Positions 1-54,364 of a stretch of 64,000 nucleotides of DNA are shown here, piece by piece. Position 1 is the stretch's first letter, and every line of letters starts with the position of its first letter. The DNA is taken from the IMG/VR virus record IMGVR_UViG_3300020202_000061, positions 124,001 through 188,000 of that record; one strand, given 5' to 3'. The position numbers and the translations under genes were made by a program. Under the pieces are notes generated by a model, which worked only from the letters and a program-made list of their open reading frames with translations, did no database searches and had not been told where the DNA came from.

Positions 1-1805
1 GCCATGATCGCATCAGCCGCACCACCATTGATTCCGATATCCAAGGTTTCGATCTGATCCCAGACCGTGTTCACGTCCACGCTCGCACGCAGAACGCGGG
101 AATCCGCTGGAAGCGTTCCGACCACGACCGGACTCGAACTGTTGAAGTTCACCGTCACATACATGACTCGGACCGCAGGAACTTCAGCCCGAAGTTCAGA
201 TTTGATTGCAGCCCAGGTGGTCTTGCGGTTGTTGGTGCCGTTGAAATAGGGAAACTCGTCGGTATCCTCGATGGTGTTGTCCGAGGTCAATCCGGTGATG
301 TTCAGACCAATGGTCGGATTACCGCTGATGCCATCACCATTCGTGATGCTGACACCCTCAAGACCAGCACCACCCGCAGTGAGGGTGCGATTCGAATAGG
401 CAGCGTTACCAGTCTTCGCCACCATACCATTACCCAGCGCATCGAGCGCAGCTAACTCAGCCTGCTCCGATGCAGGGATGTCGGTGGTCGTGAGCAGACC
501 GATATCAGAGATGATATTGGCCCAGCTACGAAACTCTGGTTGATTCGAAGCACTTGCATCAAAGAACGGTACCGTATCAGTGGTGACCGTGACAGTGTCT
601 GCGAGACCCGCACGGGTGAAACTGAATGTCAGCGTGTCGGTTCCGGCCGTTCCATCGATCTGAATACCATCAGATGCGGCAAACGTCGCTGTGTCCGGTG
701 CCGCATCCGCCACAATTGATGTGCCATTGGAGTTGCCACTCGGGGTAATCGTACCGAAGGCGTTAGTCGAACCTGCCGTCGCGATCTCACTCACCAAGTA
801 GTACTCGTTGGCACCACTCGTAGCGTTGTAGACGGGGATACGGTCGTTTGGATCAACCGCATCGGAACGAGCAGCAAGACCATTGATGTTGAGACCAATA
901 GTCGGGTTACCAGAAACTCCAGTTCCATTCGACACTGATAGTCCGGCGAGGTTACCCGCGCCATTTGCGGTAATCGTACGAGCAGCATAAGCGGCATCAC
1001 CGGTCTTCGCGACCATGCCAGCAGCCAGAGCATCGAGTGCGGCCAATTCTGCCTGCTCGGTCGCGGGGATGTCTGCTGTGGTCAGGATGCCCAGATCACT
1101 GATGAAATCGGCAACCGTAGTTTTGGATTCGTTGGTCAAGCTGGCATCGTAGAACGCCAAGGTATCACCGGAGACAATCGTGTTGGTGCCCAACCCGTTG
1201 AAGTCGAGTTGGAAATCAGAACCAACCAGTGTGATACCATTGCTGGCCGTGAAATTACCGGCCGAACTGAATTGGACCCAAACGACCGGGTCGGTGCCCA
1301 GAACATCACTGGAATTGAATGTGGTAACGAATCCCTTGTCGCCGTTTACAGTGCCTTCTTCGACGAATACGAATGCCGCAGCAAGCTTACCAGCGGTATT
1401 TGCATCCGTGGCGCGGGTCGGAGCACCACTAGCGTTGACCGTGTAGATACCATTGGTTTCCGGAGCCGCCTGATTCTTGATCAGAATGCGGTCGTTCGTG
1501 GCCAATACCACACCGTCGATGGTGTCACCGTTCTCGAAGCTGCTCGCCAGGGTTCCTGCAATGGTCGTTGCAGCACGAACTGCTTCCTTCGGACTCGCTC
1601 CCTGCACAAGCCCATCGACATATGCTTTGGAGGCGGCATCGTTGGGATCGGTCGGTGCAGTTGCCACACGCAGATTCACGTAGCTCGAATCGGTCCGATC
1701 ACGCGAGTTGAAATGGTCGGTGACCCAGGTCAGACGACCACCACCCTTGCCGTACTGGACATCCGAACCGATACCGATGAGGCCGAATTTCTTGTGGTTA
1801 GACAT
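1..1805 (-). CDS. Virion structural/fibre protein, 3' end truncated by window edge (MSNHKKFGLIGIGSDVQYGKGG...)
   Basis: Not in the ORF track (no stop inside window). ATG at 1805 with GAGGA RBS; open frame to position 1; contains AASKAYVDG, NDRILIKNQ..NGIY fibre-type motifs and an internal duplication (EQAELAALDAL..GMVAKTG..AY..RT). Confidence 0.75.
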   Translation of the reverse strand, partial: MSNHKKFGLIGIGSDVQYGKGGGRLTWVTDHFNSRDRTDSSYVNLRVATAPTDPNDAASKAYVDGLVQGASPKEAVRAATTIAGTLASSFENGDTIDGVVLATNDRILIKNQAAPETNGIYTVNASGAPTRATDANTAGKLAAAFVFVEEGTVNGDKGFVTTFNSSDVLGTDPVVWVQFSSAGNFTASNGITLVGSDFQLDFNGLGTNTIVSGDTLAFYDASLTNESKTTVADFISDLGILTTADIPATEQAELAALDALAAGMVAKTGDAAYAARTITANGAGNLAGLSVSNGTGVSGNPTIGLNINGLAARSDAVDPNDRIPVYNATSGANEYYLVSEIATAGSTNAFGTITPSGNSNGTSIVADAAPDTATFAASDGIQIDGTAGTDTLTFSFTRAGLADTVTVTTDTVPFFDASASNQPEFRSWANIISDIGLLTTTDIPASEQAELAALDALGNGMVAKTGNAAYSNRTLTAGGAGLEGVSITNGDGISGNPTIGLNITGLTSDNTIEDTDEFPYFNGTNNRKTTWAAIKSELRAEVPAVRVMYVTVNFNSSSPVVVGTLPADSRVLRASVDVNTVWDQIETLDIGINGGAADAIM

Positions 1806-1817
1806 CAGCGGTTATCC

Positions 1818-2579
1818 TCAGATGAGCCCAAATTCGGCGTAGATTCGAATTTGACCTTGTGTGCCTCCGTTCCCGTTGGGATCGGCATTGAACTGGGCTC
1901 TGATCTGTCCGTTACTGACCTGTGTGGCGGGGAGTTCCCGGATGTAGACCCCAGGGGTTCCGATATCCACATCAGTCTGTGCCATCAACGTGGTGAAACC
2001 ACCCGTGGCGACAATCGTCAGATCGGTGGCGAAGGGATCGTTGAACGGGGTCACAACCTCTACTACAACGCGCTCCACACGGGTGTTAGCGACCAGCGCA
2101 GTGCCCACGTTGTAGACGTTCGAACCGACATCAGCCGGATCGCTGAAACTGATCGTGCGGGCATACTGGCCCTTGTTGGAACCCGGTGGGTTTGAATATT
2201 CCAGAGCGGTTTCGCCCGCGTTGACCTTGATGAACTGCCCGGCATGACCGGTGAAGTCACCAGGACCATCCGGGAGCCCCTCGAACGAACCCGAGCTACT
2301 CGTGGGGGTCGTGGCCAAATCCCAAGCCGCACCGTTCCAGAGAAATCCAGCAGAGTCATTTGCAGGAATTGTGATCCCGTTGATCCGCACAGGATTGGTC
2401 GAACCCGTGGCGTTCTGGACCATGAAAAATTTGCCCACGTAGGAGCTAGGCAGGACGTGCAAGGCGCTCGGAATCGTCTGAAGGACCACGACACCAGCGT
2501 TGTGGTTGACCAGGGTCGATGTGAACGTGCCCAGTGCCGGATTTGAGAGTGTGGACCAACCGATGTAGTTGTTCGTCAT
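1818..2579 (-). CDS. Virion structural protein (253 aa)
   Basis: ORF track; TAAATA late-type promoter upstream (2603-2608); C-terminal beta-rich domain resembles the end of the adjacent ORF. Confidence 0.6.
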   Translation of the reverse strand: MTNNYIGWSTLSNPALGTFTSTLVNHNAGVVVLQTIPSALHVLPSSYVGKFFMVQNATGSTNPVRINGITIPANDSAGFLWNGAAWDLATTPTSSSGSFEGLPDGPGDFTGHAGQFIKVNAGETALEYSNPPGSNKGQYARTISFSDPADVGSNVYNVGTALVANTRVERVVVEVVTPFNDPFATDLTIVATGGFTTLMAQTDVDIGTPGVYIRELPATQVSNGQIRAQFNADPNGNGGTQGQIRIYAEFGLI

Positions 2580-2602
2580 GCGGGTTTCCCAAGATTACCG
2601 GG

Positions 2603-2608
2603 TATTTA
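2603..2608 (-). promoter_or_regulatory. TAAATA late-promoter motif (representative; also at 2636+, 4807+, 5294+, 9274+, 9583+, 24641+, 29363-, 30544-, 37505-, 40242-, 43690+, 47942-)
   Basis: Recurrent (C)TAAATA(C) just upstream of structural, lysis and head-protein genes; resembles the T4 gp55 late promoter TATAAATA. Confidence 0.7.
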
Positions 2609-2646
2609 GGAAACACCGGAGGTGCCCGAGGCTCGTAAATAATTGC

Positions 2647-2898
2647 ATGCTGATCATGCCCGAGCGCCTGACCACCATCACTATCCTCTACTGGAGGCCG
2701 GACTACCGCAGCCTCCTACAGGAATTCCTCTGGCAAACCCAAGACCTTCCACCTGAATTCCCCAGGATGATGAAATTCCTTGATCACTGGCGCACTCAGA
2801 TCGACGCGGTAATCCACCGGGTTAATCTCGCCTACGAGGGAAGGGATTCTCGAATTCGCAAGGTCGATGCAACATTTCTGATTGACAAACTCCAGTAA
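2647..2898 (+). CDS. usg: Usg-family protein
   Basis: LTTITILYWRPDYRSLLQEFLWQTQDLPPEFPRMMKFLDHW matches the alphaproteobacterial Usg pattern (LTTAEILY.MPD.P.LLQ.F.WQ..DLAP.FP.L..FLDFW); start at ATG 2647, 5 nt after TAAATA. Confidence 0.8.
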   Translation: MLIMPERLTTITILYWRPDYRSLLQEFLWQTQDLPPEFPRMMKFLDHWRTQIDAVIHRVNLAYEGRDSRIRKVDATFLIDKLQ

Positions 2899-2916
2899 TT
2901 CACCTAGGCTGGATGA

Positions 2917-3198
2917 ATGTCCAGATATCTTAGCTCACTGGAAGATGCAGAGATTTTCAACAGTACGCAGAGGTCGGAAGTGAGCAAAGAGCAGTGTTAT
3001 TTGATTTGGTTTGGTGGAACCGAACATGGTGCGTTTGGGCTAACGCCACAGGAGGCTGTGGCTAATTGGAAGCGCGACTATATCGCTGATTTCCTGGCTG
3101 AACATCCAGGTTCAACGCCACCAGTACTGCCCTCTCAGGTGCTGATTCAGCCCGACACCAGAGAATGGCATGAATGGGAAAGTATTGATGTTCCGTGA
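2917..3198 (+). CDS. Hypothetical protein
   Basis: ORF track; TTGACA-N17-TAGGCT promoter (2882-2910) 6 nt upstream. Confidence 0.6.
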   Translation: MSRYLSSLEDAEIFNSTQRSEVSKEQCYLIWFGGTEHGAFGLTPQEAVANWKRDYIADFLAEHPGSTPPVLPSQVLIQPDTREWHEWESIDVP

Positions 3199-3199
3199 T

Positions 3200-3349
3200 T
3201 TGAGCAAGAAGAAGGGTCGTCCCTGCCGCGCGTGGCCTCGGTGTGCCTGCATCATGCAGGGTCGCGAAGATGTCCATTGTCCGACCGAATACACGGTGGA
3301 CGGTCAGAAGATCGTCGTCACGCAGACCCGCACAGGAAGCTCCAAATGA
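3200..3349 (+). CDS. Small Cys-rich hypothetical protein (MSKKKGRPCRAWPRCAC...)
   Basis: TTG start right after previous stop, ATGA overlap with next gene. Confidence 0.45.
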   Translation: MSKKKGRPCRAWPRCACIMQGREDVHCPTEYTVDGQKIVVTQTRTGSSK

Positions 3350-3714
3350 CCCAACAATTCCACGCCCTCTGTTACTTCCTCACCCAGTCCGATTTTGACC
3401 GCCGCTGGCTCGAACAGGACTACTCGATCCACTTCATGGCCGAAGACCCTCAGGACGCCACCAGGGCGGTCTGGCGCTGGGTACAGGGTCGGATGCGGGC
3501 GATCCCTACCAGCTTCGGGAAGCCCGCCTGCATCAAGCTGTACCACTTCAACCCGAAGCCTATCGGCCAGGATGGGCAACTTGAGTCGGCCAACTTCCTT
3601 CCGTTCTACGAATGGAAATACGACTGGGTGGGATCGAGCATACCCGAGGAATTGGAACGACTCGGTATGATCGAGAAGGATCATCCTCGGATGGATGCGG
3701 ACGCCGGAGAGTAG
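3346..3714 (+). CDS. Hypothetical protein
   Basis: ORF track frame, start reassigned to ATG 3346 (AGGA RBS). Confidence 0.6.
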   Translation: MTQQFHALCYFLTQSDFDRRWLEQDYSIHFMAEDPQDATRAVWRWVQGRMRAIPTSFGKPACIKLYHFNPKPIGQDGQLESANFLPFYEWKYDWVGSSIPEELERLGMIEKDHPRMDADAGE

Positions 3715-3740
3715 TCTGCCTGGGCTCAATGCCCTACAGA

Positions 3741-3778
3741 GGCGGTGGGACGGAAATCTCCGTTCGGCCGCCATTTTT
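3741..3778 (+). terminator. Intrinsic terminator
   Basis: GGCGGT..GACGGA / TCCGTT..GCCGCC stem followed by ATTTTT. Confidence 0.55.
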
Positions 3779-3803
3779 GCTTTCTGGAATAAAAATTAAT
3801 CAG

Positions 3804-3833
3804 TTACCCACAGAGTTATGCACGGTATCCCCA
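3804..3833 (+). promoter_or_regulatory. Cluster of DnaA-box-like 9-mers
   Basis: TTACCCACA (3804), TTATGCACG (3816), GTATCCCCA (3825) versus consensus TTATNCACA, in an AT-rich intergenic gap. Confidence 0.4.
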
Positions 3834-3912
3834 TTGCTCATAAAGAAAGAATCAAGTAAGGTCCGGGGTGGGGGTTACCTGCAACCCAAGGGGGATTTCA
3901 GGGAGGGCATTT

Positions 3913-4200
3913 ATGCCTTTAACCGTCCATCCCCTCGTGGAAAACCATCTGGGGCGTATTGAACGCGCACGTCTGATCGAGACACGCCTGCTTGCGATGA
4001 ATGTCCCACCGGACGTGGGAGAGCGCCTCGCCCAGAACAAAGCCACTCTATTGAAGCCGGTTCTGGACGAGGCATTGTCGTGGCCGGTGGAGGCCCTGGT
4101 TGATCTTGTGCGGATCATTCCAGATATCGACTTGAAGATGATCCTATATCGTCATTTGATTGTCCATAACAATGTTAGGCTTGACATCGGAGTCTGCTAA
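3913..4200 (+). CDS. Hypothetical protein
   Basis: GGAGG RBS before ATG 3913. Confidence 0.55.
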   Translation: MPLTVHPLVENHLGRIERARLIETRLLAMNVPPDVGERLAQNKATLLKPVLDEALSWPVEALVDLVRIIPDIDLKMILYRHLIVHNNVRLDIGVC

Positions 4201-4211
4201 AGTGCAACCCC

Positions 4212-4240
4212 TTGACATTCTCAAGGGTTTGCCTTAAATA
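4212..4240 (+). promoter_or_regulatory. Hybrid promoter TTGACA-N17-TAAATA for tmRNA
   Basis: Exact spacing; same design at 54045-54073 (tRNA cluster) and 5628-5656. Confidence 0.7.
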
Positions 4241-4246
4241 GGTCTT

Positions 4247-4515
4247 GTGACGTTGAAGCGTTGAAGAACGCTACTCTGGACCTGGGGGCGGTACCCAGCG
4301 GCTCCACCAAAATGCCCTCGGGCGCTATGGGGCCGAAACAGGATCGACAGGTAGTCAGTAGGCACGTGGAGTCATCCGGCGGAAGCTCGGTTAACGCAAC
4401 ACAAACAGTAATTGCCAACGATAACTTCGTTGCGGACGAGGGTTTCCGTATGGCCGCCTAAGGCGGTCCTCGGTAATCCAAATCCATCGCCCGGTGGGCG
4501 GGAAACAGAAACACC
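4247..4515 (+). ncRNA. ssrA: Circularly permuted two-piece tmRNA (alphaproteobacterial type); tag ANDNFVADEGFRMAA
   Basis: Acceptor piece first: T-arm CTGGG-GGCGGTA-CCCAG then CGGCTCC-A-CCA (ends 4309); 19-nt spacer; coding piece starts GGGGCCGAAACAGGATCGAC (4329). GGGGCCG/CGGCTCC gives the G3:U70 Ala determinant; tag 4414-4461; 3' GGAAACAGAA motif. Outer ends approximate. Confidence 0.93.
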
Positions 4516-4545
4516 AGAGAGCCGCCTTCGGGCGGCTCTCTTTTT
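4516..4545 (+). terminator. Intrinsic terminator of tmRNA
   Basis: AGAGAGCCGCC-TTCG-GGCGGCTCTCT followed by TTTT. Confidence 0.9.
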
Positions 4546-4561
4546 GTGTGGGATTACGGAA

Positions 4562-4768
4562 ATGCAAAAGTATCAACTCTGGTATAACGAAAAGACACAG
4601 ACCTATGCGATGCTCTACGGGAAGCGCCTGAATGAGCCGCTGATCGCTCGTACCTCGACCCTGTTCCATGAGTTCCAGGCCGAATCCTTGCGGCAAGCCG
4701 GACTAATCAGTTCCCGCGCCATCGCCGCCCATAAGCAGCGCTTGGCCAACCGAAAGAGGGTGGCGTAA
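4562..4768 (+). CDS. Hypothetical protein
   Basis: ATG 4562 in ORF-track frame. Confidence 0.55.
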   Translation: MQKYQLWYNEKTQTYAMLYGKRLNEPLIARTSTLFHEFQAESLRQAGLISSRAIAAHKQRLANRKRVA

Positions 4769-4836
4769 TTTTCCGCGAAATTTAACACCATTCTGGAGTT
4801 CTCCTGTAAATAGATAATATTAATAGGAGAACCCCC

Positions 4837-5139
4837 ATGGCCTCGTACGCGACCGAACGTAAGATCAGAATCATCAAGGAAAAGCTCGGACCTGACTGGG
4901 AGACCTACACCCAGGGCAAGCGGATCGACGCTGCCTACAACGAACTCGTAGGGGATTCCCGCAAGAACCTCTTCTGCAAGCTTCGCCCCGAGACCAAGGC
5001 CAAGTTGGATGAGATGGTCCGGGACAACGACACGAAGATGGCCGAATTCATTGAGAGCCTGATCGAACGCGAATACGACCGCTTCACCCAAGCCAAAACC
5101 CGCAAAACCGAAGACCTCGCCGCCCGGTTCACTCGGTAA
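4837..5139 (+). CDS. Ribbon-helix-helix (CopG/Arc-like) DNA-binding protein
   Basis: KNLFCKLRPETKAKLDEMVRDNDTKMAEFIESLIERE strand-helix-helix pattern; AGGAG RBS. Confidence 0.55.
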   Translation: MASYATERKIRIIKEKLGPDWETYTQGKRIDAAYNELVGDSRKNLFCKLRPETKAKLDEMVRDNDTKMAEFIESLIEREYDRFTQAKTRKTEDLAARFTR

Positions 5140-5145
5140 ACCACC

Positions 5146-5301
5146 CAGTATGATGGTATTGGTTTTCTAATACCATCATACTGAATCTGATTGTTAGGGA
5201 ATCTCAAGTAGTATGTGAGTTTTTCTCACACAAGCATATCAGATATGCTTGTATTACATTGATATTTCTATTGTATTAGTCAATACAAGTATCTAAATAC
5301 T
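5146..5301. repeat. AT-rich cluster of inverted repeats
   Basis: CAGTATGATGGTATT/AATACCATCATACTG (15 bp perfect), TGTGAG/CTCACA, ACAAGCATATC/GATATGCTTGT, TTGTATT/AATACAA, AGTAT/ATACT. Confidence 0.8.
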
Positions 5302-5319
5302 CTCTGTGGAAAGCAAACC

Positions 5320-5490
5320 ATGATGAACTGGCTCAAACGAGTTGGTCGTGAGTTGCTGATGACATCGAGGGAGCGCCAGGAGCAGGCATTCCTCGGGCAG
5401 GCGGTAGACCTAGCGGATTTGGAGTGGCGCATGAAAGAGATTCAATCGGGCCGCTTCATTTGCAAACCTTATGAGCGTTGCTACAGATGA
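5320..5490 (+). CDS. DUF3563-like small protein
   Basis: 56 aa, ERQEQAFLGQAVDLADLEWRMKEI resembles the DUF3563 pattern (E..EAYL..S.D..DLERRMR); below ORF-track cutoff. Confidence 0.6.
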   Translation: MMNWLKRVGRELLMTSRERQEQAFLGQAVDLADLEWRMKEIQSGRFICKPYERCYR

Positions 5491-5657
5491 TCTGGGGCAA
5501 AGCTGTGGGTCTGCTCGGGTTCATGCCGTCGCGACCGAGAGACGAGGTGGATCGCTTTTTCGACCTCGAATATCGTCGTGAATCAGCAGACTATCGTGAC
5601 GTTCTGAATCGCGAATTCCGAAAGGGGTTGAAAAACTCCTCGGAAACCGCTAAGTAA
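5487..5657 (+). CDS. Small hypothetical protein (56 aa)
   Basis: ATGA overlap with previous ORF. Confidence 0.45.
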   Translation: MIWGKAVGLLGFMPSRPRDEVDRFFDLEYRRESADYRDVLNREFRKGLKNSSETAK

Positions 5658-5662
5658 GAACC

Positions 5663-5768
5663 AAGCGACAACGACAATTTGTTCCTCCTAGCCGCGTAAG
5701 CGGCTGGATGGGTGATCCACCTGGAAACAGAACGGGTATGATGGGCGAGGAGAAATCCTCGCCTTTTT
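5663..5768 (+). ncRNA. Stand-alone tmRNA mRNA-like-domain RNA (tag-like frame DNDNLFLLAA*)
   Basis: GACAACGACAAT..GCCGCGTAA tag-like frame, stop-codon hairpin CTAGCCGC-GTAA-GCGGCTGG, ACCTGGAAACAGAA motif like the 3' end of alpha tmRNA coding pieces; promoter TTGAAA-N17-TAAGTA; terminator GGCGAGGA-GAAA-TCCTCGCC-TTTTT. Confidence 0.6.
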
Positions 5769-5811
5769 CATTTCTCTTGACATTTCCCGGAGTTTCTATG
5801 ATATTGGAGGA

Positions 5812-6225
5812 ATGAGCGAGAAAACCCCAGAGATCACCCGCACCATGGACGAGAAGGAATGGCTAGAAACCGGCCATACCCTGGGGATGCATGAGGTGCT
5901 TCACGCGGTTTCCATAGTCAGATATGTGGCGAAGCGCTACCTCCAGGAGCACCCGGCGGTGCAGGAGGTTCCCTTGATCAAGTCACACATCGACCGCATC
6001 TGCTCGGCTCTGGCTCGACTCTATCAAGACGTAGGTTCGTGGCCGGAATTCTTAGCCACCCCGGATGTTACTCTGGAGAATGCCGAGCGCATTGCCAATG
6101 CTATGCGCGATACTCTCGCCTCATCCACGTCCGAGCAGTTCCTCACCAGTCGTGAGGAACTGCTCGGTGTGCTCCGTTTGATGGAGGCGTACATTCTGGC
6201 TACGCCCCGAAAGGATCAGGCATGA
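5812..6225 (+). CDS. Hypothetical protein
   Basis: ORF track; TTGACA promoter and GGAGG RBS. Confidence 0.65.
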   Translation: MSEKTPEITRTMDEKEWLETGHTLGMHEVLHAVSIVRYVAKRYLQEHPAVQEVPLIKSHIDRICSALARLYQDVGSWPEFLATPDVTLENAERIANAMRDTLASSTSEQFLTSREELLGVLRLMEAYILATPRKDQA

Positions 6226-6545
6226 CCTGGATGGTCGAGTCCGACATCCGTATCGATCTGGTCCGACAAGACCAGCCGATGAGCGTGATGACCATGCTGA
6301 TTACCACCGGCACTGTAGTGGACGGACCCAGGGTTCCGCCGAAGCAGTTCGTCGATCTCATGGTTCGCCATTTCAAGTCTCATGCCCTGGTCAATCCCAC
6401 CGAGGACGCACTCACCGCATTCCCTGGCGATGCCATCTACGTGAACGGGGTGTTCCACGATCAGATTCGTCCCGATGACCTCAAGAAGGTCGAACAACCC
6501 AAGGTTCTCGACTACGAGGATTACCCAAGTTTCCGGGTGCACTGA
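6222..6545 (+). CDS. Hypothetical protein
   Basis: ORF track; ATGA overlap. Confidence 0.6.
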   Translation: MTWMVESDIRIDLVRQDQPMSVMTMLITTGTVVDGPRVPPKQFVDLMVRHFKSHALVNPTEDALTAFPGDAIYVNGVFHDQIRPDDLKKVEQPKVLDYEDYPSFRVH

Positions 6546-6712
6546 TGGAGAAATTCCTGATCGTCGGGAGCATCGTGCTGACCCTGGGTATTGTTGCGCT
6601 AGGCGGCATTCAAAAGGCCATACGCGAGGTCAATGCTGGACCGGTTCCAACTCTCGCTCCGCAACTCAAACCCGATGCCGGACCATTAGCGCCCGGTTGG
6701 AGCTACGAATAA
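6545..6712 (+). CDS. Small membrane-anchored protein
   Basis: MEKFLIVGSIVLTLGIVALGG hydrophobic N-terminus; TGATG and TAATG couplings. Confidence 0.5.
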   Translation: MEKFLIVGSIVLTLGIVALGGIQKAIREVNAGPVPTLAPQLKPDAGPLAPGWSYE

Positions 6713-7134
6713 TGGACAACTTCCGTATCGACGTGACCAGTAAGGGTGCACCTGCCCTGGTGCAAGTTCTCAGGCTGATCGAACTGAATGAGGGCAGGCT
6801 GCGCGTGCATGGATTCCGTCTGGAGAAGGGCGAGTTCGAGACTGGATCGAGTCGTACATATGTGCCAACCGAGCGCATCATCCTCTACAAGACCCGTCCG
6901 AGCCATCCTCATGAGGGATTCACCCCGTTGCCCGCGCCGATCAACCTGGAAATGGCGGTGGCCATGGTCATGTCCTGGTTGGAATTCGAGGACACCCAAT
7001 ACGGGCCAGAACTCGATCACGACGGCTCCAACAGCCGTGGCTGGCGTGCCTACAACGAGAACTGGGGCCACGTCCATGGGGAATGGGAAGCGTTTGTCGC
7101 AGTCGAACCCCATTGGGCGTGGCACGGCAAATGA
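6712..7134 (+). CDS. Hypothetical phage protein
   Basis: Start reassigned to ATG 6712 (MDNFRIDV...); DHDGS..GW..YNE.WGHV motif. Confidence 0.65.
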   Translation: MDNFRIDVTSKGAPALVQVLRLIELNEGRLRVHGFRLEKGEFETGSSRTYVPTERIILYKTRPSHPHEGFTPLPAPINLEMAVAMVMSWLEFEDTQYGPELDHDGSNSRGWRAYNENWGHVHGEWEAFVAVEPHWAWHGK

Positions 7135-7415
7135 CCATCCCTCGTCTCAATCCGGCCGATTTCCTCCCACTGGTTCTGCTCCAGGGTATTGCCCTGTACA
7201 TAATCCAGCCTTGGTGGAAAGCCTTATTGGTGATTCCCGCACTGTTTGCTGTGGCATTGCCTGCGATCTTATATGAGCGCGAATACGTACGTCGTCGCAT
7301 GCAAGGCGAACCCACACTTTGGATCAGTCTGGGTATCAGCTTGTATTTCGTTCTGATGTTGCTCGGACTCGCCGTTCTCCATTGGCAGCGAGCGATGGAG
7401 TCCGTCTATGGCTAG
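7131..7415 (+). CDS. Membrane protein
   Basis: Three hydrophobic segments; ATGA overlap. Confidence 0.6.
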   Translation: MTIPRLNPADFLPLVLLQGIALYIIQPWWKALLVIPALFAVALPAILYEREYVRRRMQGEPTLWISLGISLYFVLMLLGLAVLHWQRAMESVYG

Positions 7416-7905
7416 AGCCAAGAAGTATCCGCAGGTCGGGGTCAGTGTGTTTCTGTTCGGTGAGATCGAGCAGAAGTTATGCGTGCTGATGAGCCTGAAA
7501 AAGATTGGCAATCACAAGGGCTATCTGATCCTGCCCGGTGGCCATTTGGAGTTCCAGGAATCCTTGGAGGACTGCGCTCGCCGTGAGGTCCAGGAAGAAA
7601 CCGGCGTGGGTATCTGGAAAAACCACATCAAGATGGTCGCGATGTGCCAAGACATCCACCGATCGAACGAGAATCACTACCTGAATGTATTTTTCAGAAC
7701 CAGCCTGACCGATAAGCAGGTCAAACAAGTCTGCAATCCCGAGCCTCACAAGCACTCGGATTGGCAGTGGATCACCTGTGATGACCTTGTCTCTGACAAG
7801 GTCAAGAAGATCGCTCCCAGCACCCTGGAGGTGATCCGCAACAACGACCGTTACGAGATCGGAGAACCGGTTTCGCTCTACCCACTACGCTGGAGGAATG
7901 CGTGA
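7408..7905 (+). CDS. Nudix hydrolase (MutT/NUDT15-like)
   Basis: Nudix box GGHLEFQESLEDCARREVQEETGV; PQVGV and N.EP.K..W.W motifs. Confidence 0.9.
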   Translation: MARAKKYPQVGVSVFLFGEIEQKLCVLMSLKKIGNHKGYLILPGGHLEFQESLEDCARREVQEETGVGIWKNHIKMVAMCQDIHRSNENHYLNVFFRTSLTDKQVKQVCNPEPHKHSDWQWITCDDLVSDKVKKIAPSTLEVIRNNDRYEIGEPVSLYPLRWRNA

Positions 7906-8010
7906 TGTTCAACATGTGGACCTTTGCCGCTGTGGTGGCGGTCTGCATCACGGCCTACTCGATTGTTGAGTTACAGCCGTTCTGTCGTTAATCCCAGGAA
8001 AGGAATGAAT

Positions 8011-8319
8011 ATGTTCGGGAATCTTATCAGGAACACCGTGGGCGCGGTCGCCGACATCGCCGAAGCCGGTCTGAATGTGGCCACGGCCGTGGCCAAGCCC
8101 GTGGTGAATGCCACGGTCGAAACCGCCAAGGCCGGAATCGAACTCGCTACCCCGCTGGTCGAGGTCGCCGTGGATGCGACCAAGGCTGGTGTGGAAGTTG
8201 CGACCGATCTGGCCAAACCCGTGGTCGATCTCACCGTCGAGGCCGCCGATACCGTGGTCGAGGCCGGTGCGGAAGTAGCACGCGATATCCGCGATGCTAC
8301 CCGCTCGCTCAAGGACTAA
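8011..8319 (+). CDS. Ala/Val/Thr-rich amphipathic repeat protein
   Basis: AGGA RBS; repeated AG.xVAT..AKPVV..TVE units. Confidence 0.6.
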   Translation: MFGNLIRNTVGAVADIAEAGLNVATAVAKPVVNATVETAKAGIELATPLVEVAVDATKAGVEVATDLAKPVVDLTVEAADTVVEAGAEVARDIRDATRSLKD

Positions 8320-8368
8320 AGAGGCCATACTCTAATCGTCTGAGGTTCTGAAACAGGAGAAATAAGTC

Positions 8369-8671
8369 ATGGGAATGTCCTTTCACGTGATCGCCGAGCG
8401 CGAACGTGACGCCGAGTTCCAACGCATGTTCGAGGTCCTTCGTGTATGCAAGGAAAACGACGTGTCCGTGCCCCCGGAGGTCGTCAAGTTCTTCGGTGAG
8501 AAAAATATCGAGAACTACGATGATGTCGAAACCATTGCGGATGCTGCCGTGGAGGTGGACATCGACAAGCTCGTGAAGGTGGTCCAGGGCGATTATTTCG
8601 AGGATCGTACCCTCGATCTCAAGGACCTCCCCGCCTCGGTCAAGCGGTTGAAGTTTCGCGTCAGCGCATGA
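8369..8671 (+). CDS. Hypothetical protein
   Basis: ORF track; AGGAG RBS. Confidence 0.65.
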   Translation: MGMSFHVIAERERDAEFQRMFEVLRVCKENDVSVPPEVVKFFGEKNIENYDDVETIADAAVEVDIDKLVKVVQGDYFEDRTLDLKDLPASVKRLKFRVSA

Positions 8672-8889
8672 TCGATCTGATCCAGATCGTCACCTCGGTG
8701 GCGGAATATCACTACGAGGTTACCGGCATTGCTGGTGCAATCCTCGCCGGAATCCTCATGGTGTTTGCGGTGATCTGGATGATCATCATATGGTTTGCGG
8801 TGATGCTGGCTCTGATCATTGGATTCGGGTGGCCTTTCATCTTGCTGGCCCTGATCATCTACATTATTGTTTGGATGATAAAAAGATGA
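8668..8889 (+). CDS. Small membrane protein
   Basis: Long hydrophobic stretch; ATGA overlap. Confidence 0.55.
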   Translation: MIDLIQIVTSVAEYHYEVTGIAGAILAGILMVFAVIWMIIIWFAVMLALIIGFGWPFILLALIIYIIVWMIKR

Positions 8890-8964
8890 AGAAAATTTGG
8901 GAAATGATCGGTGCTGGTATCGAAGTGATTTTCAACTTCGGAAGTTTGGATTAGAGGTGTCGCG

Positions 8965-9276
8965 ATGTGGTGGATTTTGGAATTCCTGGCAAATCCCTGG
9001 TTGATCTGGATCATGGTCGGGATTCTAGCCGTCGCCTTGATCGCGATGGTGGCGGAATTCCTGCTGGAAGCCTTCTCTGATTCTCCTCTATTCCATATGC
9101 TTGGACATTCGTGGTCCGTGAACAAGTGGGAGCCTGAGACGCGCCGAGCCATGCGCTGGGTCATGCCCTTGTGGATGATCTGGACCTTCTTGACATATGT
9201 TCCGGTCGCCATCATTTTGGGTACTCTTATTGGACTCGATGCCCTAAAGGACTCGATCAAGTCCTTTACCAAGTAA
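8965..9276 (+). CDS. Membrane protein
   Basis: Two hydrophobic segments; GAGG RBS. Confidence 0.6.
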   Translation: MWWILEFLANPWLIWIMVGILAVALIAMVAEFLLEAFSDSPLFHMLGHSWSVNKWEPETRRAMRWVMPLWMIWTFLTYVPVAIILGTLIGLDALKDSIKSFTK

Positions 9277-9284
9277 ATACCATC

Positions 9285-9317
9285 ATGAACAAGAACCTGC
9301 ACCGCACCTCCATATGA
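9285..9317 (+). CDS. Putative leader peptide MNKNLHRTSI (last codon ATA) upstream of tRNA-Ile(UAU)
   Basis: ATG 5 nt after TAAATA (same spacing as other apparent leaderless genes here); ATA-TGA overlaps a small terminator hairpin. Confidence 0.5.
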   Translation: MNKNLHRTSI

Positions 9318-9336
9318 CTCCCACTCAGGAGTTTTT
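9316..9336 (+). terminator. Small attenuator-like terminator immediately before tRNA-Ile
   Basis: (G)ACTCC-CACTCA-GGAGT(T) then TTT; weak stem. Confidence 0.45.
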
Positions 9337-9426
9337 GGGCGTGTGGTGTAATGGCAGCACAGCGGTCTTATAAGCCGTTCGTTCCGGACTGGAGCATAGA
9401 GACGGGTTCGATTCCCTCCACGCCTA
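9337..9426 (+). tRNA. tRNA-Ile(UAU) with long variable arm
   Basis: Acceptor GGGCGTG/CACGCCT, A73; anticodon loop CTTATAA; V-arm GTTCCG-GAC-TGGAGC; T-loop TTCGATT with bulged T-stem; CCA not encoded (CCG). Confidence 0.8.
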
Positions 9427-9430
9427 CCGA

Positions 9431-9451
9431 GGCCCCCTAGTGGGGCCTTTT
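9431..9451 (+). terminator. Intrinsic terminator after tRNA-Ile
   Basis: GGCCCC-CTAGT-GGGGCC-TTTT. Confidence 0.75.
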
Positions 9452-9459
9452 CTGCGTCT

Positions 9460-9543
9460 AAACCTAATTTTGGTGCAGCAGAAAAACCTAATTCCAGCAC
9501 AATAAACTCGAACCCGTACAACACAATAAACGCGAAACCGTAC
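9460..9543. repeat. Direct repeats with 24-nt period
   Basis: AAACCTAATT at 9460 and 9484; CACAATAAAC(T/G)CGAA(C/A)CCGTAC at 9498 and 9522. Confidence 0.7.
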
Positions 9544-9656
9544 GAAACCCCAGGGTTCGTCCCAGAGCCTGATCGTCTGTCCTAAATATTCCTGATCTTT
9601 TTACGTGGCTTAAGCCGCGCACGGGCCTTGTGCCCGATCAGGAGGAACTGACGGTT

Positions 9657-14366: not shown

Positions 14367-14379
14367 GGAATGAACAGAT

Positions 14380-19770: not shown

Positions 19771-19790
19771 TAATAGAGGGTATTTGATAG

Positions 19791-25077: not shown

Positions 25078-26523
25078 GTGTCAAAGACCCAGGATATCGA
25101 CGAGAAAACCAAGAAAGAGCGGGAAAAGTTTACCGGGCTGGATTGGGCCTGCATTCCTAGCACCTTGGTACCGCTGCTCGAATATCTGCTCGGTGAACAG
25201 AAGCGGGATGGGAGTTGGAAGCCCGCAGCGAACGTGATGATTTGGGGCGCTCCTGGCATCGGCAAGACCGACATCGTTCGACAGACCGCTCGCTCCTGGG
25301 GCTATTCTACGGTGGCTCTCCATCTGCCCCAGTACGATCCCACTGACATCAAGGGTATCGCCGTCCGTATGGAGGATGGCTCGGTTCGGTGGATGAACAC
25401 CAGTTACCTGCCACAGCAGGTGGTGAAGCGGGTCATCGAGGATACCAAGTCGGTCGGTGTGGATTTCAAGGTGGTCAATCCGGACCGCGATCTGTGGGTG
25501 CGTCTGGTCGATGCCAAGGGGCGCACGGTCCACGCCTGGAACAACGACAAGCGATATCCCGGACTCCGTATGGATGGGGTCCAGATGACCATGACTGAGC
25601 GCACCACCGACGAACACGACCATTTCAAGCTGTTCACGGTGACCTCGAAGTCCTCTCTCAAAGGCTATCGGATCGAAGTGATCGAGAAGGTCATTCTGTT
25701 CCTGGATGAGTTGTCGGCGGCCGATCCGGGCACACAGAACGCTGCACTCCAACTTGTCTTGGATCGCCGTGTCAACGAGTATGACGTGCCCGAGGGTGTG
25801 CCCATCGTGGCCGCAGGCAATCGTGAGAGCGACGGCGCGTTTGTCCAGCAGATGAGCTTGCCCTTGGCGAACCGCTTCTGCCATATCAAGCTGATGCCCT
25901 CGGTGGACGATTTCGTCTCTTACGCGCTCAAGATTGGTTGCCATCCGGATATCGTCTCCCATCTGTATGACTCCGGTAGCAACTCCCTGCTCAAGGTGGA
26001 CGCTGACGCTCTGGCTGACGGCAACATGGGGTTCCCAAGCCCGCGCATCTGGATCAAGTTCTCTGAGCAGTATGACGATGCGCTCCCCGATGATATGATC
26101 AATCGGATGGCTGTGGGGTTCGTCGGCGTCCTGGAAGCGGCGAATTTCTCGATCTTCCGGAAAGTCAGCACGAAGCTGCCCAGCACCGAGGCGATCCTTC
26201 GGGGTCAGGACGTGTCCGACAAGATGCACGGCTTGGATCGGGTCGCTTACAACAACTTGGTCATGCGCTTGCTGTCCAAGCTCAAGGACTACCACACCAA
26301 TTACTACAAACCGGGTGTCCATGAGAATGATCAGGTCCAGGAGTGGCAGACCGCCGTCAACTCGGCGTTCACATTTATTCCGAAATTCCTCGGAGCCGAG
26401 ATCAGCGCATTCGTGGCGTTCCTCATTCCCGGCCTTATCCCGATGGAACATCTGCGCAGCGATGCGTTCGAGAAGTTCTGCAATAAGTACGTGGACATGT
26501 ATCAGAGGGTGAACCGGTTTTGA
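25078..26523 (+). CDS. MoxR-type AAA+ ATPase
   Basis: Walker A GAPGIGKT, Walker B ILFLDE, AAGNR sensor, LANRF arginine finger, SPR.W. Confidence 0.9.
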   Translation: MSKTQDIDEKTKKEREKFTGLDWACIPSTLVPLLEYLLGEQKRDGSWKPAANVMIWGAPGIGKTDIVRQTARSWGYSTVALHLPQYDPTDIKGIAVRMEDGSVRWMNTSYLPQQVVKRVIEDTKSVGVDFKVVNPDRDLWVRLVDAKGRTVHAWNNDKRYPGLRMDGVQMTMTERTTDEHDHFKLFTVTSKSSLKGYRIEVIEKVILFLDELSAADPGTQNAALQLVLDRRVNEYDVPEGVPIVAAGNRESDGAFVQQMSLPLANRFCHIKLMPSVDDFVSYALKIGCHPDIVSHLYDSGSNSLLKVDADALADGNMGFPSPRIWIKFSEQYDDALPDDMINRMAVGFVGVLEAANFSIFRKVSTKLPSTEAILRGQDVSDKMHGLDRVAYNNLVMRLLSKLKDYHTNYYKPGVHENDQVQEWQTAVNSAFTFIPKFLGAEISAFVAFLIPGLIPMEHLRSDAFEKFCNKYVDMYQRVNRF

Positions 26524-45321: not shown

Positions 45322-45373
45322 CGCTTGCCTCAGAACCAAATCCCCACCATATTTGGGGTTGGAAAGAAGAATA

Positions 45374-53319: not shown

Positions 53320-54048
53320 ATGTCCGACGAGAATCCCTTCGAGCACCTATCTGACTCGGAATTGATGGACCGTCTTGGTGTGTCCTGGAATTCCGTGCTG
53401 AACCTGCGTGCGCAGATCAAGAAGGCCAAGGAAGCTCTTCCGGCCGCGTCCGAGGAATTGGAACAGCTTGAACGGGAGGCGAGCAAGCGCAAACGCCGCG
53501 ATGAATGGCTGGCGAAGCAGCCCGAGTTCGAACGAGCCCGTCAGGACCCGGAGTGGCAGGCGTGGCGCGTGGCATTCCTAGCGCGGGCTCGGGCGGCCGA
53601 AATCAACACACTGAACCTTCCAACGCCGGGTTTGAATTTCGTCCATGAGGACGTGTCTCTGACAGACCTCAACCTGTTCATGGCTCCGATCCATCCCGAG
53701 GAAGAGTTCGTTCGGTTCGACAATTCCTGGACCATGGCCCAGGTTGTGGTGCACGTCGGTCTATTCCAGAGCCTGACTCAGGCCAGAAAGAACGGTTTCA
53801 ACAAGCCGATTCCCAGTGGTTTCTCCCAGCATGTGATGGGGAAGAAGAAAACCACGGTGTTCATTCTGAACCGCTTACCCAAAGAGCCTAAGCCCACGCG
53901 TAGCATGTCTTGGGTCTACCAGGGTGTCAGCTATACCTACGGAAATGGCTTTTACACCTGCACCTATCCCGATGGTATTTGGTCGGTCTCGTTCAATGGA
54001 GTGCATTTCGTAAATGGAAAAGTTGTGCGTTCGAAAAGAAACTCTTGA
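53320..54048 (+). CDS. Hypothetical protein with possible S4-like RNA-binding motif
   Basis: Coiled-coil N-terminus; MAQVVVHVGLFQSLTQARKNG resembles the S4 motif. Confidence 0.55.
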   Translation: MSDENPFEHLSDSELMDRLGVSWNSVLNLRAQIKKAKEALPAASEELEQLEREASKRKRRDEWLAKQPEFERARQDPEWQAWRVAFLARARAAEINTLNLPTPGLNFVHEDVSLTDLNLFMAPIHPEEEFVRFDNSWTMAQVVVHVGLFQSLTQARKNGFNKPIPSGFSQHVMGKKKTTVFILNRLPKEPKPTRSMSWVYQGVSYTYGNGFYTCTYPDGIWSVSFNGVHFVNGKVVRSKRNS

Positions 54049-54094
54049 CACACCCTGGGGTTTCGACTAAATACGTCCTGATCGCGAGATCAAC

Positions 54095-54210: not shown

Positions 54211-54286
54211 GCCCCTGTAGCTCAGTGAATAGAGCGGCCGGTTTCTACCCGGTAGGTCGGGAGTTTGAATCTCTCCAGGGGTGCCA
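54211..54286 (+). tRNA. tRNA-Arg(UCU)
   Basis: GCCCCTG/CAGGGGT acceptor, loop TTTCTAC, encoded CCA. Confidence 0.9.
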
Positions 54287-54287
54287 A

Positions 54288-54364
54288 CCAGCGGTAGCTC
54301 AGAGACAGTAGAGCGCCGGAGTTAAATCTGGAGGTCGGGGGTTCAATTCCTTCCCGCTGGGCCA
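54288..54364 (+). tRNA. Atypical tRNA with 6-nt anticodon loop (GTTAAA); possibly Asn-derived
   Basis: CCAGCGG/CCGCTGG, G73, CCA; stem CCGGA/TCTGG closes only 6 nt. Confidence 0.65.

What the first reader, a model, noticed from the sequence alone, without database searches (positions are those of the whole stretch)
4212..4545. Phage-encoded circularly permuted (two-piece) tmRNA
Seen: acceptor-first gene order, G3:U70, 19-nt hairpin spacer, tag ANDNFVADEGFRMAA. Established: permuted ssrA is characteristic of Alphaproteobacteria (Caulobacter tag ANDNFAEEFAVAA), where tmRNA also affects replication timing. It points to the host class and is easily missed by annotation. The spacer and acceptor piece are very compact; no smpB is in the window.
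Basis: partly seen in the sequence, partly recalled or inferred. Interest (0 to 1): 0.6.

Follow-up and report, generated by a model that had tools for sequence, protein, structure and literature searches.

The report
Jumbo-phage two-piece tmRNA gene
A 347-kb soil phage carries its own intact copy of the split (two-piece) ribosome-rescue RNA typical of Alphaproteobacteria. Phage genes of this kind are already known, but here it is conserved across a phage family and has the same promoter type as the phage's tRNA genes.

Summary
ARAGORN calls a permuted tmRNA at 4216-4552 (+) with the tag ANDNFVADEGFRMAA. Rfam scores it 113.6 bits (tmRNA_permuted, cut-off 47) and 108.5 bits (alpha_tmRNA, cut-off 50).

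The window lies in a 347.5-kb IMG/VR jumbo myophage from soil. The phage has 55 tRNA genes, no SmpB and no integrase.

Eight further metagenome contigs of related phages carry the gene at the same place, in five sequence variants.
- 149 of 153 base-pair cells of the tRNA-like domain stay paired.
- 17 of 31 pairs show compensatory double changes.
- G3:U70 never varies.
- The 48-nt tag frame is nucleotide-identical in three of four relatives.

The gene has a promoter motif, TTGAC-N16-19-TAAATA. The motif occurs 18 times in the genome, and 15 of those lie just upstream of tRNA or tmRNA genes.

The cultured Sinorhizobium phage Phosso has an unannotated relative with the same promoter type and the same shortened P2 region. 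Four relatives that infect Gammaproteobacteria have no tmRNA.

Phage-encoded two-piece tmRNAs are already published, so this is a new member of a known kind. Processing and tagging remain untested, because no RNA data exist.

The parts
4207..4240 (+). Promoter: extended -35 (ACCCC TTGACA, 4207-4217), 17-nt spacer, -10 box TAAATA (4235-4240)
   Evidence: TTGAC-N16-19-TAAATA occurs twice in the window against 0.03 expected. It occurs 18 times in the genome, and 15 of the 16 + strand hits lie upstream of a tRNA or tmRNA gene. Both boxes are conserved in the relatives while the DNA around them is not. The generic sigma-70 scan did not flag it.
4247..4309 (+). Acceptor piece, about 63 nt: short 5' P2 strands, T arm (4282-4298), 3' acceptor strand CGGCUCC and encoded ACCA (4299-4309)
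   Evidence: Rfam model position 1 is 4247. It lies 6 nt after the -10 box, as for the phage tRNA genes. Pairings are supported by covariation. Ends are inferred, not mapped.
4310..4328 (+). Intervening segment, 19 nt, removed during processing; small hairpin with a CUCG loop
   Evidence: Sequence and fold. The relatives keep a hairpin with a UUCG loop on a different stem sequence. Length is within the bacterial range of 9-44 nt.
4329..4547 (+). Coding piece: 5' acceptor strand GGGGCCG (4329-4335), elbow AAACAGGAUCGAC (4336-4348), 3' P2 strands (4348-4375), PK1-region hairpin (4376-4390), tag frame, P5, 3' hairpin, terminator
   Evidence: The mature 3' end is unknown; the Rfam alpha model ends at 4520.
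4414..4461 (+). Tag reading frame: resume codon GCC, 15 codons (ANDNFVADEGFRMAA), stop TAA
   Evidence: ARAGORN and translation. The frame is 47/47 nt identical in three of four diverged relatives; L045 has one synonymous change and one R-to-A change.
4452..4468 (+). Helix P5: 7-bp hairpin with the stop codon in its loop
   Evidence: RNAalifold consensus; invariant in all five variants.
4488..4500 (+). 3' hairpin CGCCC-GGU-GGGCG, followed by the conserved AACAGAA tract
   Evidence: One compensatory C:G to U:A change in L044 and L045. The AACAGAA tract aligns to the alpha_tmRNA consensus.
4516..4547 (+). Intrinsic terminator: 11-bp GC-rich stem, UUCG loop, T-run
   Evidence: Terminator scan. 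The stem covaries in the relatives: 59 of 59 cells paired and 2 compensatory pairs.
4562..4768 (+). Conserved 68-aa ORF directly downstream (function unknown); the synteny anchor for the family
   Evidence: Homologues at 79-91% identity all lie just downstream of a permuted tmRNA wherever the upstream DNA is held. No Pfam or PHROG hit.
54045..54073 (+). Second copy of the same promoter motif in the window, upstream of the tRNA cluster at 54211-54922

Best explanation
This is a working, phage-encoded two-piece tmRNA (ssrA).

Proposed mechanism, all of it inferred:
1. The gene is transcribed from a promoter of the class that also precedes most of the phage's tRNA genes. The result is one precursor of about 300 nt that starts near 4247 and ends at the terminator at 4516-4547.
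2. Host tRNA-processing enzymes remove the 19-nt spacer. RNase P cuts before G4329, and 3' trimming leaves the encoded ACCA at 4309.
3. This gives an acceptor piece of about 63 nt and a coding piece of about 190-220 nt, held together by the acceptor stem and the P2 helices.
4. Host AlaRS charges the RNA through G3:U70.
5. With host SmpB and EF-Tu it enters stalled ribosomes. Translation resumes at GCC 4414 and appends ANDNFVADEGFRMAA.
6. The ribosome is released, and the tagged protein is presumably handed to host proteases.

The likely benefit is to keep ribosome rescue running during a long jumbo-phage infection, alongside the phage's near-complete tRNA set.

Shown here: the gene's anatomy, its conservation and covariation, its promoter class, and the absence of SmpB, ClpP and integrase from the phage genome.
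For: - The gene passes two independent detectors well above threshold.
- It sits in the middle of a 347.5-kb myophage genome. An independent soil metagenome holds the identical locus.
- Nine further metagenome contigs of related phages were fetched; the eight that reach upstream of the 68-aa ORF all carry the gene there.
- Across five distinct variants, 149 of 153 cells of the tRNA-like domain are standard pairs and 17 of 31 pairs have compensatory double changes. Controls with the partner slid by 1-3 columns give 47-63 of about 150 cells paired and at most 2 compensatory pairs.
- G3:U70, the elbow sequence, ACCA, the PK1-region hairpin, the resume context, P5 and the stop codon are conserved.
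- The tag frame is 47/47 nt identical in three relatives whose flanks are only about 80-88% identical.
- Promoter class: 18 genome hits, where the chance rate measured in the window (0.03 per 64 kb) predicts under one. Fifteen of the hits lie upstream of RNA genes, and the -10 box ends 5-23 nt before the RNA gene in 12 of those 15, 6 nt for the tmRNA.
- Terminator stem covaries.
- The phage also encodes a CCA-adding enzyme and a stand-alone GGQ/RF-1-domain protein, so it invests in translation upkeep.
- Phage-encoded tmRNAs, two-piece ones included, are documented (PMC9004378; PMC7162821; PMC11242549).
Against: - There is no RNA evidence. Only two DNA runs hold the locus, so expression, the transcript ends and cleavage into two pieces are unobserved.
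- The host is unknown, so compatibility with host SmpB, AlaRS and RNase P is assumed.
- The phage encodes no SmpB.
- PK1 as a true pseudoknot was not established; only its first hairpin is seen.
- Helix H2 has two mismatched pairs in the window's own copy, and a local hairpin could compete with it.
- The tag is longer (15 aa) than 27 of the 30 tags ARAGORN called in the comparison loci (10-13 aa for the usual ANDN...AA kind). It ends in RMAA rather than the usual LAA or VAA, so its proteolytic fate is uncertain. One bacterial tag in the sample does end in MAA.
- Invariance of the tag frame could partly reflect recent recombination rather than selection.
Confidence: 0.8

Rival explanations
1. 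Tag hijack. The RNA works as a tmRNA, but its purpose is to replace the host tag with a phage-specific one. Rescued proteins would then be routed differently: spared, sent to another adaptor or protease, or used to recycle host proteins into amino acids.
For: The 15-aa tag is nearly invariant in the phage family. It differs in length and in its middle and C-terminal residues from all 30 tags ARAGORN called in the comparison loci, 27 of them 10-13 aa. Buchholz et al. proposed selective tagging as one possible role for phage tmRNA (PMC9004378).
Against: The tag keeps the canonical ANDN start and the AA end that mark ordinary alphaproteobacterial tags. It resembles the Caulobacter tag AANDNFAEEFAVAA (string verified in the literature). 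A bacterial tag ending in MAA exists in the sample. The phage encodes no ClpP. No adaptor was looked for.
Confidence: 0.12
2. Inert passenger. The gene is host DNA captured by the phage, an attP-type remnant of integration into ssrA, or an assembly chimera, and has no function.
For: tmRNA genes are common integration sites, and prophage ends often carry ssrA fragments (PMC9004378). Two of three IMG/VR contigs that share the T-arm 32-mer have the tmRNA at a contig end.
Against: The gene is complete, lies 128 kb into the contig and is flanked by phage ORFs. The genome has no integrase. The locus is identical in a second study's metagenome and syntenic in eight contigs of related phages. There are 17 compensatory pairs and almost no broken pairs. 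The promoter is the phage's own stable-RNA class. No sampled bacterium matches beyond the 71-nt conserved core.
Confidence: 0.03
3. Decoy or inhibitor. The RNA binds host SmpB or ribosomes without productive tagging and so shuts down host trans-translation. This has been reported for the tmRNA-like RNA of mycobacteriophage DS6A, which lacks a tag frame.
For: The DS6A form inhibits endogenous tmRNA when expressed in E. coli (PMC11915505). The phage has no SmpB of its own, so it must compete for the host's.
Against: The resume codon, the 15-codon frame, the stop codon and P5 are all intact and strictly conserved. A decoy would have no need for them.
Confidence: 0.04

Closest known systems
Alphaproteobacterial two-piece tmRNA (Caulobacter crescentus ssrA; Rfam RF01849 alpha_tmRNA and RF04321 tmRNA_permuted)
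   Same: Permuted gene order, and a 32-nt T-arm/acceptor segment identical to some alphaproteobacterial MAGs. Also shared: G3:U70, encoded CCA, the elbow sequence, a short hairpin-bearing spacer, a tag of ANDNF...AA type similar to Caulobacter's, the AACAGAA 3' tract and overall gene length.
   Different: It is encoded by a phage with no SmpB. The acceptor piece is about 63 nt. It lacks the 5' hairpin and the conserved UAUGGCGAUAAAC-type P2 segment found in 24 of 32 bacterial loci. The tag is 15 aa and ends in RMAA. No sampled bacterial genome matches outside the 71-nt core.
Unannotated permuted tmRNA of Sinorhizobium phage Phosso (PV764938.1, 469 kb, soil). The related phage AP-J-162 is reported to have one tmRNA (PMC11242549).
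   Same: A jumbo myophage with a related capsid (58.8% identity). Alpha-type permuted tmRNA at 113 bits, the same TTGAC...TAAATA promoter directly upstream, and the same shortened P2 with a GUUGAU-like 5' segment.
   Different: The Phosso spacer is about 410 nt, against 19 nt here. Its tag is ANDNVSTKVALAA. No nucleotide-level match was found outside conserved cores.
Two-piece tmRNAs of marine phages (Methylophilales phage Melnitz, pelagimyophages; Buchholz et al. 2022, PMC9004378)
   Same: Phage-encoded, alpha-type, permuted and placed behind an early-type promoter. That survey found 53 unique two-piece forms among 402 tmRNA-bearing phages.
   Different: Those phages are marine T4-like phages of ordinary size, and Melnitz has a glutamine riboswitch at the 3' end. 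No riboswitch is detected here. This phage is from soil, whereas 50 of those 53 forms were from marine or aquatic phages.
tmRNA and SmpB genes of huge phages (Al-Shayeb et al. 2020, PMC7162821)
   Same: A phage of more than 200 kb with a large tRNA set and ribosome-rescue or termination factors.
   Different: This genome has the RNA but no SmpB. Instead it has a stand-alone GGQ-domain protein.
One-piece tmRNAs of cluster C mycobacteriophages, and the tag-less tmRNA-like RNA of phage DS6A
   Same: Phage-borne tmRNA genes in tRNA-rich myophages.
   Different: Those are the standard, unpermuted gene form from actinobacterial phages. DS6A lacks the tag frame and acts as an inhibitor, whereas here the frame is intact and conserved.

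Membership tests
tmRNA, permuted (two-piece) form (Rfam RF04321) | Covariance-model score above the curated gathering threshold | tested here: met
   113.6 bits against 47, full-length model match 1-213. Relatives score 102-107 bits.
tmRNA, permuted (two-piece) form (Rfam RF04321) | Circularly permuted gene order: 3' half of the tRNA-like domain with CCA first, then a spacer, then the 5' acceptor strand and the mRNA-like domain | tested here: met
   ARAGORN 'tmRNA*'. ACCA ends at 4309 and GGGGCCG starts at 4329.
tmRNA (any form) | tRNA-Ala-like acceptor stem of 7 bp with G3:U70, a T arm and a 3' CCA | tested here: met
   All 7 acceptor pairs and 5 T-stem pairs are kept in 5 variants, with 5 compensatory pairs. 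G:U at position 3 is invariant.
tmRNA (any form) | Tag reading frame that starts at an Ala resume codon and ends in a hydrophobic ...AA plus stop, with the stop codon in helix P5 | tested here: met
   GCC 4414 to TAA 4461, ANDNFVADEGFRMAA; P5 at 4452-4468.
tmRNA (any form) | Pseudoknot PK1 upstream of the resume codon | tested here: inconclusive
   A conserved hairpin at 4376-4390 occupies the PK1 position. The second stem of a pseudoknot was not identified, and the region never varies, so there is no covariation to test it.
tmRNA (any form) | Dedicated partner SmpB | tested here: not met
   No PF01668 match at E <= 1 in the 347.5-kb phage genome; the same search is positive in the bacterial control genomes. 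The host would have to supply it, as is usual for phage tmRNAs. This concerns the phage's self-sufficiency, not the identity of the RNA.
Two-piece tmRNA | Precursor cleaved into acceptor and coding RNAs; alanylation; tagging of non-stop products | not testable with these tools
   Only DNA runs hold the locus and no RNA run does.
Alphaproteobacterial subtype (Rfam RF01849) | Score above threshold and clade-specific sequence: GGCGGUA T loop, AACAGAA 3' tract, ANDN tag start | tested here: met
   108.5 bits against 50. The T-arm/acceptor 32-mer is identical to alphaproteobacterial MAGs. 191 of 401 sampled genomes of the class match the core.
Alphaproteobacterial subtype (Rfam RF01849) | Full-length P2 with a 5' hairpin on the acceptor piece | tested here: not met
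   The model alignment has a 13-nt deletion and mismatched pairs there. The bacterial P2 motif is present in 24 of 32 bacterial loci and in none of 6 phage loci.
Phage-encoded tmRNA | Located inside a bona fide phage genome, not at a prophage-host junction | tested here: met
   128 kb into a 347.5-kb contig that encodes sheath, capsid, portal and baseplate proteins. No integrase. Syntenic in related phage contigs.

The most novel reading that the evidence does not exclude
In this phage family the tmRNA may be modular: an invariant 'message' module (PK1 region, tag frame, P5) joined to an exchangeable tRNA-like module.

The tRNA-like module exists in at least two alleles:
- Type A has the canonical alpha T arm.
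- Type B has the T arm ACGGC-UGCGAA-GCCGU. It was not found at 80% identity or more in 401 sampled alphaproteobacterial genomes.

The alleles are swapped by recombination at a breakpoint inside the gene. The permuted gene order makes this possible, because it places the whole tRNA-like domain in one contiguous block.

The swapping would be adaptive. It could match different hosts' SmpB, RNase P or EF-Tu. Or it could escape a host nuclease or defence system that targets tRNA-like RNAs, by analogy with phage tRNAs that evade tRNA-cleaving defences.
Probability: 0.15. Interest if true: 0.65.

Novelty: new member of a known kind. Interest (0 to 1): 0.38.

Why it matters
This is a well-supported case of a phage carrying the RNA half of the bacterial ribosome-rescue system, in a soil jumbo phage rather than the marine phages where two-piece forms have mostly been reported.

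- The family alignment shows the gene is maintained by selection.
- The promoter result places it in one promoter class with most of the phage's tRNA genes, as part of one "translation upkeep" programme. That programme also includes a CCA-adding enzyme and a stand-alone GGQ-domain factor.
- The gene, its promoter type and the Phosso relative give a usable, though not decisive, pointer to an alphaproteobacterial host for an uncultured 347-kb phage.
- The unannotated Phosso gene shows that such genes are under-counted.
- Phosso is cultured, so it offers a practical system for testing what a phage tmRNA does.
- The split between an invariant tag module and two swappable tRNA-like modules is unexplained and deserves a follow-up.

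Tried and rejected
- Nucleotide searches of the gene and of window 1-20000 against 50,697 phage records found nothing useful. The only hit was 75 nt in an unannotated faecal phage contig.
- Exact tag-region patterns found nothing in viral contigs or genome contigs.
- The search for related loci with the 253-aa neighbour found no relatives.
- The generic sigma-70 scan missed the promoter, because its -10 box ends in A.
- Minimum-free-energy folds of the precursor or of the two pieces recover the T arm and acceptor stem but not P2. I did not rely on them.
- An alternative genetic code was considered because the genome has a tRNA(CUA), and rejected. Standard-code ORFs cover 95% of the genome, and TAG ends about 15% of crude ORFs.
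- Terminase_6C (PF17289) gave no hit. Phage identity rests on the sheath, capsid and portal instead.
- Laying reads gave no variation and no RNA. Both runs are DNA contigs identical to the window over the gene.
The best core matches (85-87% over 71 nt) have tags ANDNRAPVALAA and ANDNSREMAVAA.
- One genome of the 401-genome sample (G043) is flagged unpublished. It enters only the tally of 191/401, and no specific claim rests on it.
- Keiler et al. 2000 (PMC16621) is not held in the library. The sizes of the Caulobacter pieces were therefore not checked and are not used.
- I did not run the count of structure pairs, to avoid typing a long bracket string. The same counts were computed in a script.

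Full report
**1.

ARAGORN finds one tmRNA in the window. It is of the permuted kind, lies at 4216-4552 (+), and has the tag peptide ANDNFVADEGFRMAA. Rfam agrees with two models:
- tmRNA_permuted (RF04321) matches 4247-4461 at 113.6 bits, against a gathering score of 47.
- alpha_tmRNA (RF01849) matches 4208-4520 at 108.5 bits, against 50.

The sequence gives these parts:

| Part | Coordinates |
|---|---|
| T arm | 4282-4298 |
| 3' acceptor strand plus encoded ACCA | 4299-4309 |
| Spacer (19 nt, small hairpin) | 4310-4328 |
| 5' acceptor strand GGGGCCG (makes G3:U70) | 4329-4335 |
| Conserved elbow | 4336-4348 |
| Tag frame | 4414-4461 |
| P5 hairpin holding the stop codon | 4452-4468 |
| Intrinsic terminator | 4516-4547 |

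The gene fills the 361-bp gap between two small + strand ORFs that have no family match.

**2. It is in a phage**

The window is bases 124001-188000 of a 347,504-bp IMG/VR virus record, rated 90% complete by CheckV.
- The genome encodes a tail sheath, a major head protein, a portal and baseplate parts.
- It has 55 tRNA genes, all on the + strand.
- It has no integrase and no SmpB.
- The standard genetic code fits.
- The major capsid protein is about 60% identical to those of the roughly 350-kb GAP32/CBB-type phages of Gammaproteobacteria. It is 58.8% identical to that of Sinorhizobium phage Phosso.
- The DNA comes from soil. Two soil-metagenome runs from different studies hold it, and the second has a 1,201-nt contig identical over 3848-5048. 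No RNA run holds it.

**3. It is a conserved gene family, not a one-off**

A degenerate pattern for the tag found a second metagenome contig (L041) with the same tag on a diverged gene. Homologues of the 68-aa ORF just downstream, at 79-91% identity, led to eight more contigs from other samples. Every one that reaches upstream of the ORF has a permuted tmRNA there.

There are five distinct variants (alignments A3 and A4). In the RNAalifold consensus and in my own count:
- The tRNA-like domain has 31 pairs, and 149 of 153 cells form standard pairs.
- 17 pairs carry compensatory double changes.
- With the partner column slid by 1-3 positions, only 47-63 of about 150 cells pair, and at most 2 pairs look compensatory.
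- G3:U70 is invariant.
- The 3' hairpin and the terminator stem also covary.

This rules out a dead passenger or an assembly artefact.

**4. Promoter class**

The boxes TTGACA (4212-4217) and TAAATA (4235-4240), 17 nt apart, are conserved in the relatives while the DNA around them is not.
- TTGAC-N16-19-TAAATA occurs twice in the window against 0.03 expected. The second copy, at 54045-54073, precedes the tRNA cluster at 54211-54922.
- Genome-wide there are 18 copies. Fifteen of the 16 on the + strand lie upstream of a tRNA or tmRNA gene. Most share the prefix ACCYC.
- In 12 of those 15, the -10 box ends 5-23 nt before the RNA gene. For the tmRNA the distance is 6 nt if the RNA starts at Rfam model position 1, which is 4247.

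So the tmRNA shares one promoter class with most of the phage's tRNA genes, and the acceptor piece should start at about 4247. This is inferred, not mapped. The -10 box CTAAAT fits the Caulobacter RpoD -10 consensus GCtANAWC (PMC8144410).

**5. What is ordinary and what is not**

- Ordinary: the 19-nt spacer. Bacterial alphaproteobacterial loci have spacers of 9-44 nt, median 25, often with UUCG-type hairpins (the sample was chosen by BLAST and is therefore biased). Overall gene length and tag position also match the bacterial genes.
- Unusual: the acceptor piece is short. Twenty-four of 32 bacterial loci have a conserved P2 segment that starts 33-35 nt upstream of GGAC. In the 10 bacterial loci I inspected, a hairpin precedes it. 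In the phage the -10 box ends only 37 nt upstream of GGAC, and the segment is absent.
- Unusual: the tag has 15 residues, against 10-13 for 27 of the 30 tags ARAGORN called in the comparison loci; the other three are 20-33 residues. It most resembles the Caulobacter tag AANDNFAEEFAVAA (string checked).
- Not a recent capture: in 401 genomes sampled evenly from the class, none matches beyond a 71-nt core. The best are 85-87% identical there.

**6. An unexplained pattern**

Conservation is inverted relative to bacterial tmRNAs.
- The message module is essentially invariant: the PK1-region hairpin, the 48-nt tag frame and P5 never change. The tag frame is 47/47 nt identical in three of four relatives, although the flanks are only about 80-88% identical. 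The stretch between the PK1 hairpin and the resume codon does vary (about 80-85% identical), and two relatives carry an insertion there.
- The tRNA-like domain comes in two alleles. Type A (window, L042, L044) has the canonical alpha T arm. Type B (L045 and the L046 group) has the T arm ACGGC-UGCGAA-GCCGU.
- The best bacterial matches to type B are 72-78% identical over the core, and they still carry the canonical T arm.
- L044 and L045 encode the identical downstream protein. They are 94.5% identical from the PK1 region onward and 99% identical farther upstream, yet they carry different alleles. Recombination therefore exchanges the tRNA-like block at a breakpoint inside the gene.

The permuted gene order makes that block contiguous. 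Why two alleles persist is unknown.

**7. A cultured relative, and the host question**

Sinorhizobium phage Phosso (PV764938.1) has a permuted alpha-type tmRNA at 349596-350198 (-), scoring 113.3 bits. Its spacer is about 410 nt and its tag is ANDNVSTKVALAA.
- The GenBank record does not annotate it, and ARAGORN misses it.
- It has the same TTGAC...TAAATA motif directly upstream and the same short 5' region.
- The motif occurs 11 times in Phosso, against 0-1 times in four relatives that infect Gammaproteobacteria.
- Those four relatives have neither a permuted nor a standard tmRNA above threshold.

Together with the alpha-type RNA, this favours an alphaproteobacterial host. It does not prove one. 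Melnitz carries an alpha-type ssrA while infecting a non-alphaproteobacterial host (PMC9004378).

**8. Mechanism**

The best-supported reading is a functional two-piece tmRNA that depends on the host.
1. A precursor runs from the stable-RNA promoter to the terminator.
2. RNase P and 3' processing remove the spacer.
3. AlaRS charges the RNA through G3:U70.
4. Host SmpB and EF-Tu deliver it to stalled ribosomes.
5. Translation resumes at GCC 4414, the product is tagged and the ribosome is released.

The anatomy, the conservation and the promoter class are shown. Every biochemical step is inferred.

The phage also encodes a CCA-adding enzyme and a 143-aa stand-alone GGQ/RF-1-domain protein. Both fit a programme that keeps translation running.

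Rival readings are less likely, for the reasons given in their entries: tag hijack, decoy, and inert capture or attP remnant.

**9. Novelty**

Phage-encoded tmRNAs are established.
- Buchholz et al. found tmRNA genes in 402 of 18,146 phage genomes, with 53 unique two-piece forms, 50 of them from marine or aquatic phages.
- Huge phages carry tmRNA and SmpB.
- The soil Sinorhizobium jumbo phage AP-J-162 is reported to have one tmRNA.

This is therefore a new member of a known kind. The added value is the family-level covariation, the shared stable-RNA promoter, the shortened acceptor piece that Phosso shares, and the swappable tRNA-like module. Interest is moderate.

**Housekeeping**

One genome of the class sample (G043) is flagged unpublished and enters only the 191/401 tally.

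Noticed in passing
window 54211-54922 (promoter motif at 54045-54073): A tRNA cluster on the + strand: Arg(UCU), four Glu genes, and an odd tRNA at 54288-54364. ARAGORN gives the odd one a 6-nt anticodon loop ('ta'), and Rfam scores it as a tRNA at 45 bits. The cluster is preceded by the same promoter motif as the tmRNA.
   Followed up: partly
window 9337-9428: tRNA-Ile with anticodon UAU. It is 92 nt long and has an unusually long extra arm (Rfam tRNA 45.8 bits).
   Followed up: partly
outside the window: genome 218699-218776 (locus L055): A well-formed tRNA with anticodon CUA, amber-suppressor-like (ARAGORN labels it 'Pyl'). The genome otherwise reads well in the standard code, and TAG ends about 15% of crude ORFs. 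If it is active it would cause read-through, which could add to the load on ribosome rescue.
   Followed up: partly
outside the window: genome 299355-299786 (L060 1480-1911 +): A 143-aa stand-alone GGQ/RF-1-domain protein. It matches the C-terminal part of RF1/RF2 and lacks the codon-recognition domain, and it matches PHROG families described as 'RF-1 domain peptide chain release factor'. It may be a codon-independent peptidyl-tRNA hydrolase, and so a second rescue or termination factor beside the tmRNA.
   Followed up: partly
outside the window: genome 225138-226499 (L061): A CCA-adding enzyme (PolyA_pol domain, 116.6 bits) directly upstream of two tRNA-Met genes.
   Followed up: no
window 45353-46960: A 535-aa ORF whose N-terminal 140 residues match the anti-CBASS protein Acb1 (PF23474, 79.5 bits). 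The rest has no match.
   Followed up: no
window 56609-57820; 30568-32868; 25078-27980: An RNA ligase with an OB-fold domain close to the tRNA cluster. A 766-aa protein with a C-terminal NUDIX domain. An AAA ATPase next to a DUF2201 metallopeptidase/VWA protein, which is about 30% identical to proteins of Salicola phage SCTP-2 and of other jumbo phages of about 350 kb.
   Followed up: no
window 9630-14366 and 14380-19770: Two giant + strand ORFs (1,578 and 1,796 aa) in a stretch with raised G+C (up to 62%) and strong GC skew. They share a short domain found in PHROGs 2803 and 25721 (function unknown).
   Followed up: no
PV764938.1 349596-350198, minus strand (L059 997-1599): Sinorhizobium phage Phosso has a permuted alpha-type tmRNA with a spacer of about 410 nt. 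The GenBank record has no feature there, and ARAGORN does not find it.
   Followed up: yes
L042 about 2790-2820 and L044 about 2710-2735: Two relatives carry a 23-27-nt hairpin insertion immediately after the PK1-region hairpin of the tmRNA. The window and the type B relatives lack it.
   Followed up: no
window 4209-4227: A 7-bp inverted repeat overlaps the -35 box of the tmRNA promoter, and the terminator scan flags it as terminator-like. It may end the upstream ORF (3868-4200), or it may be chance.
   Followed up: no
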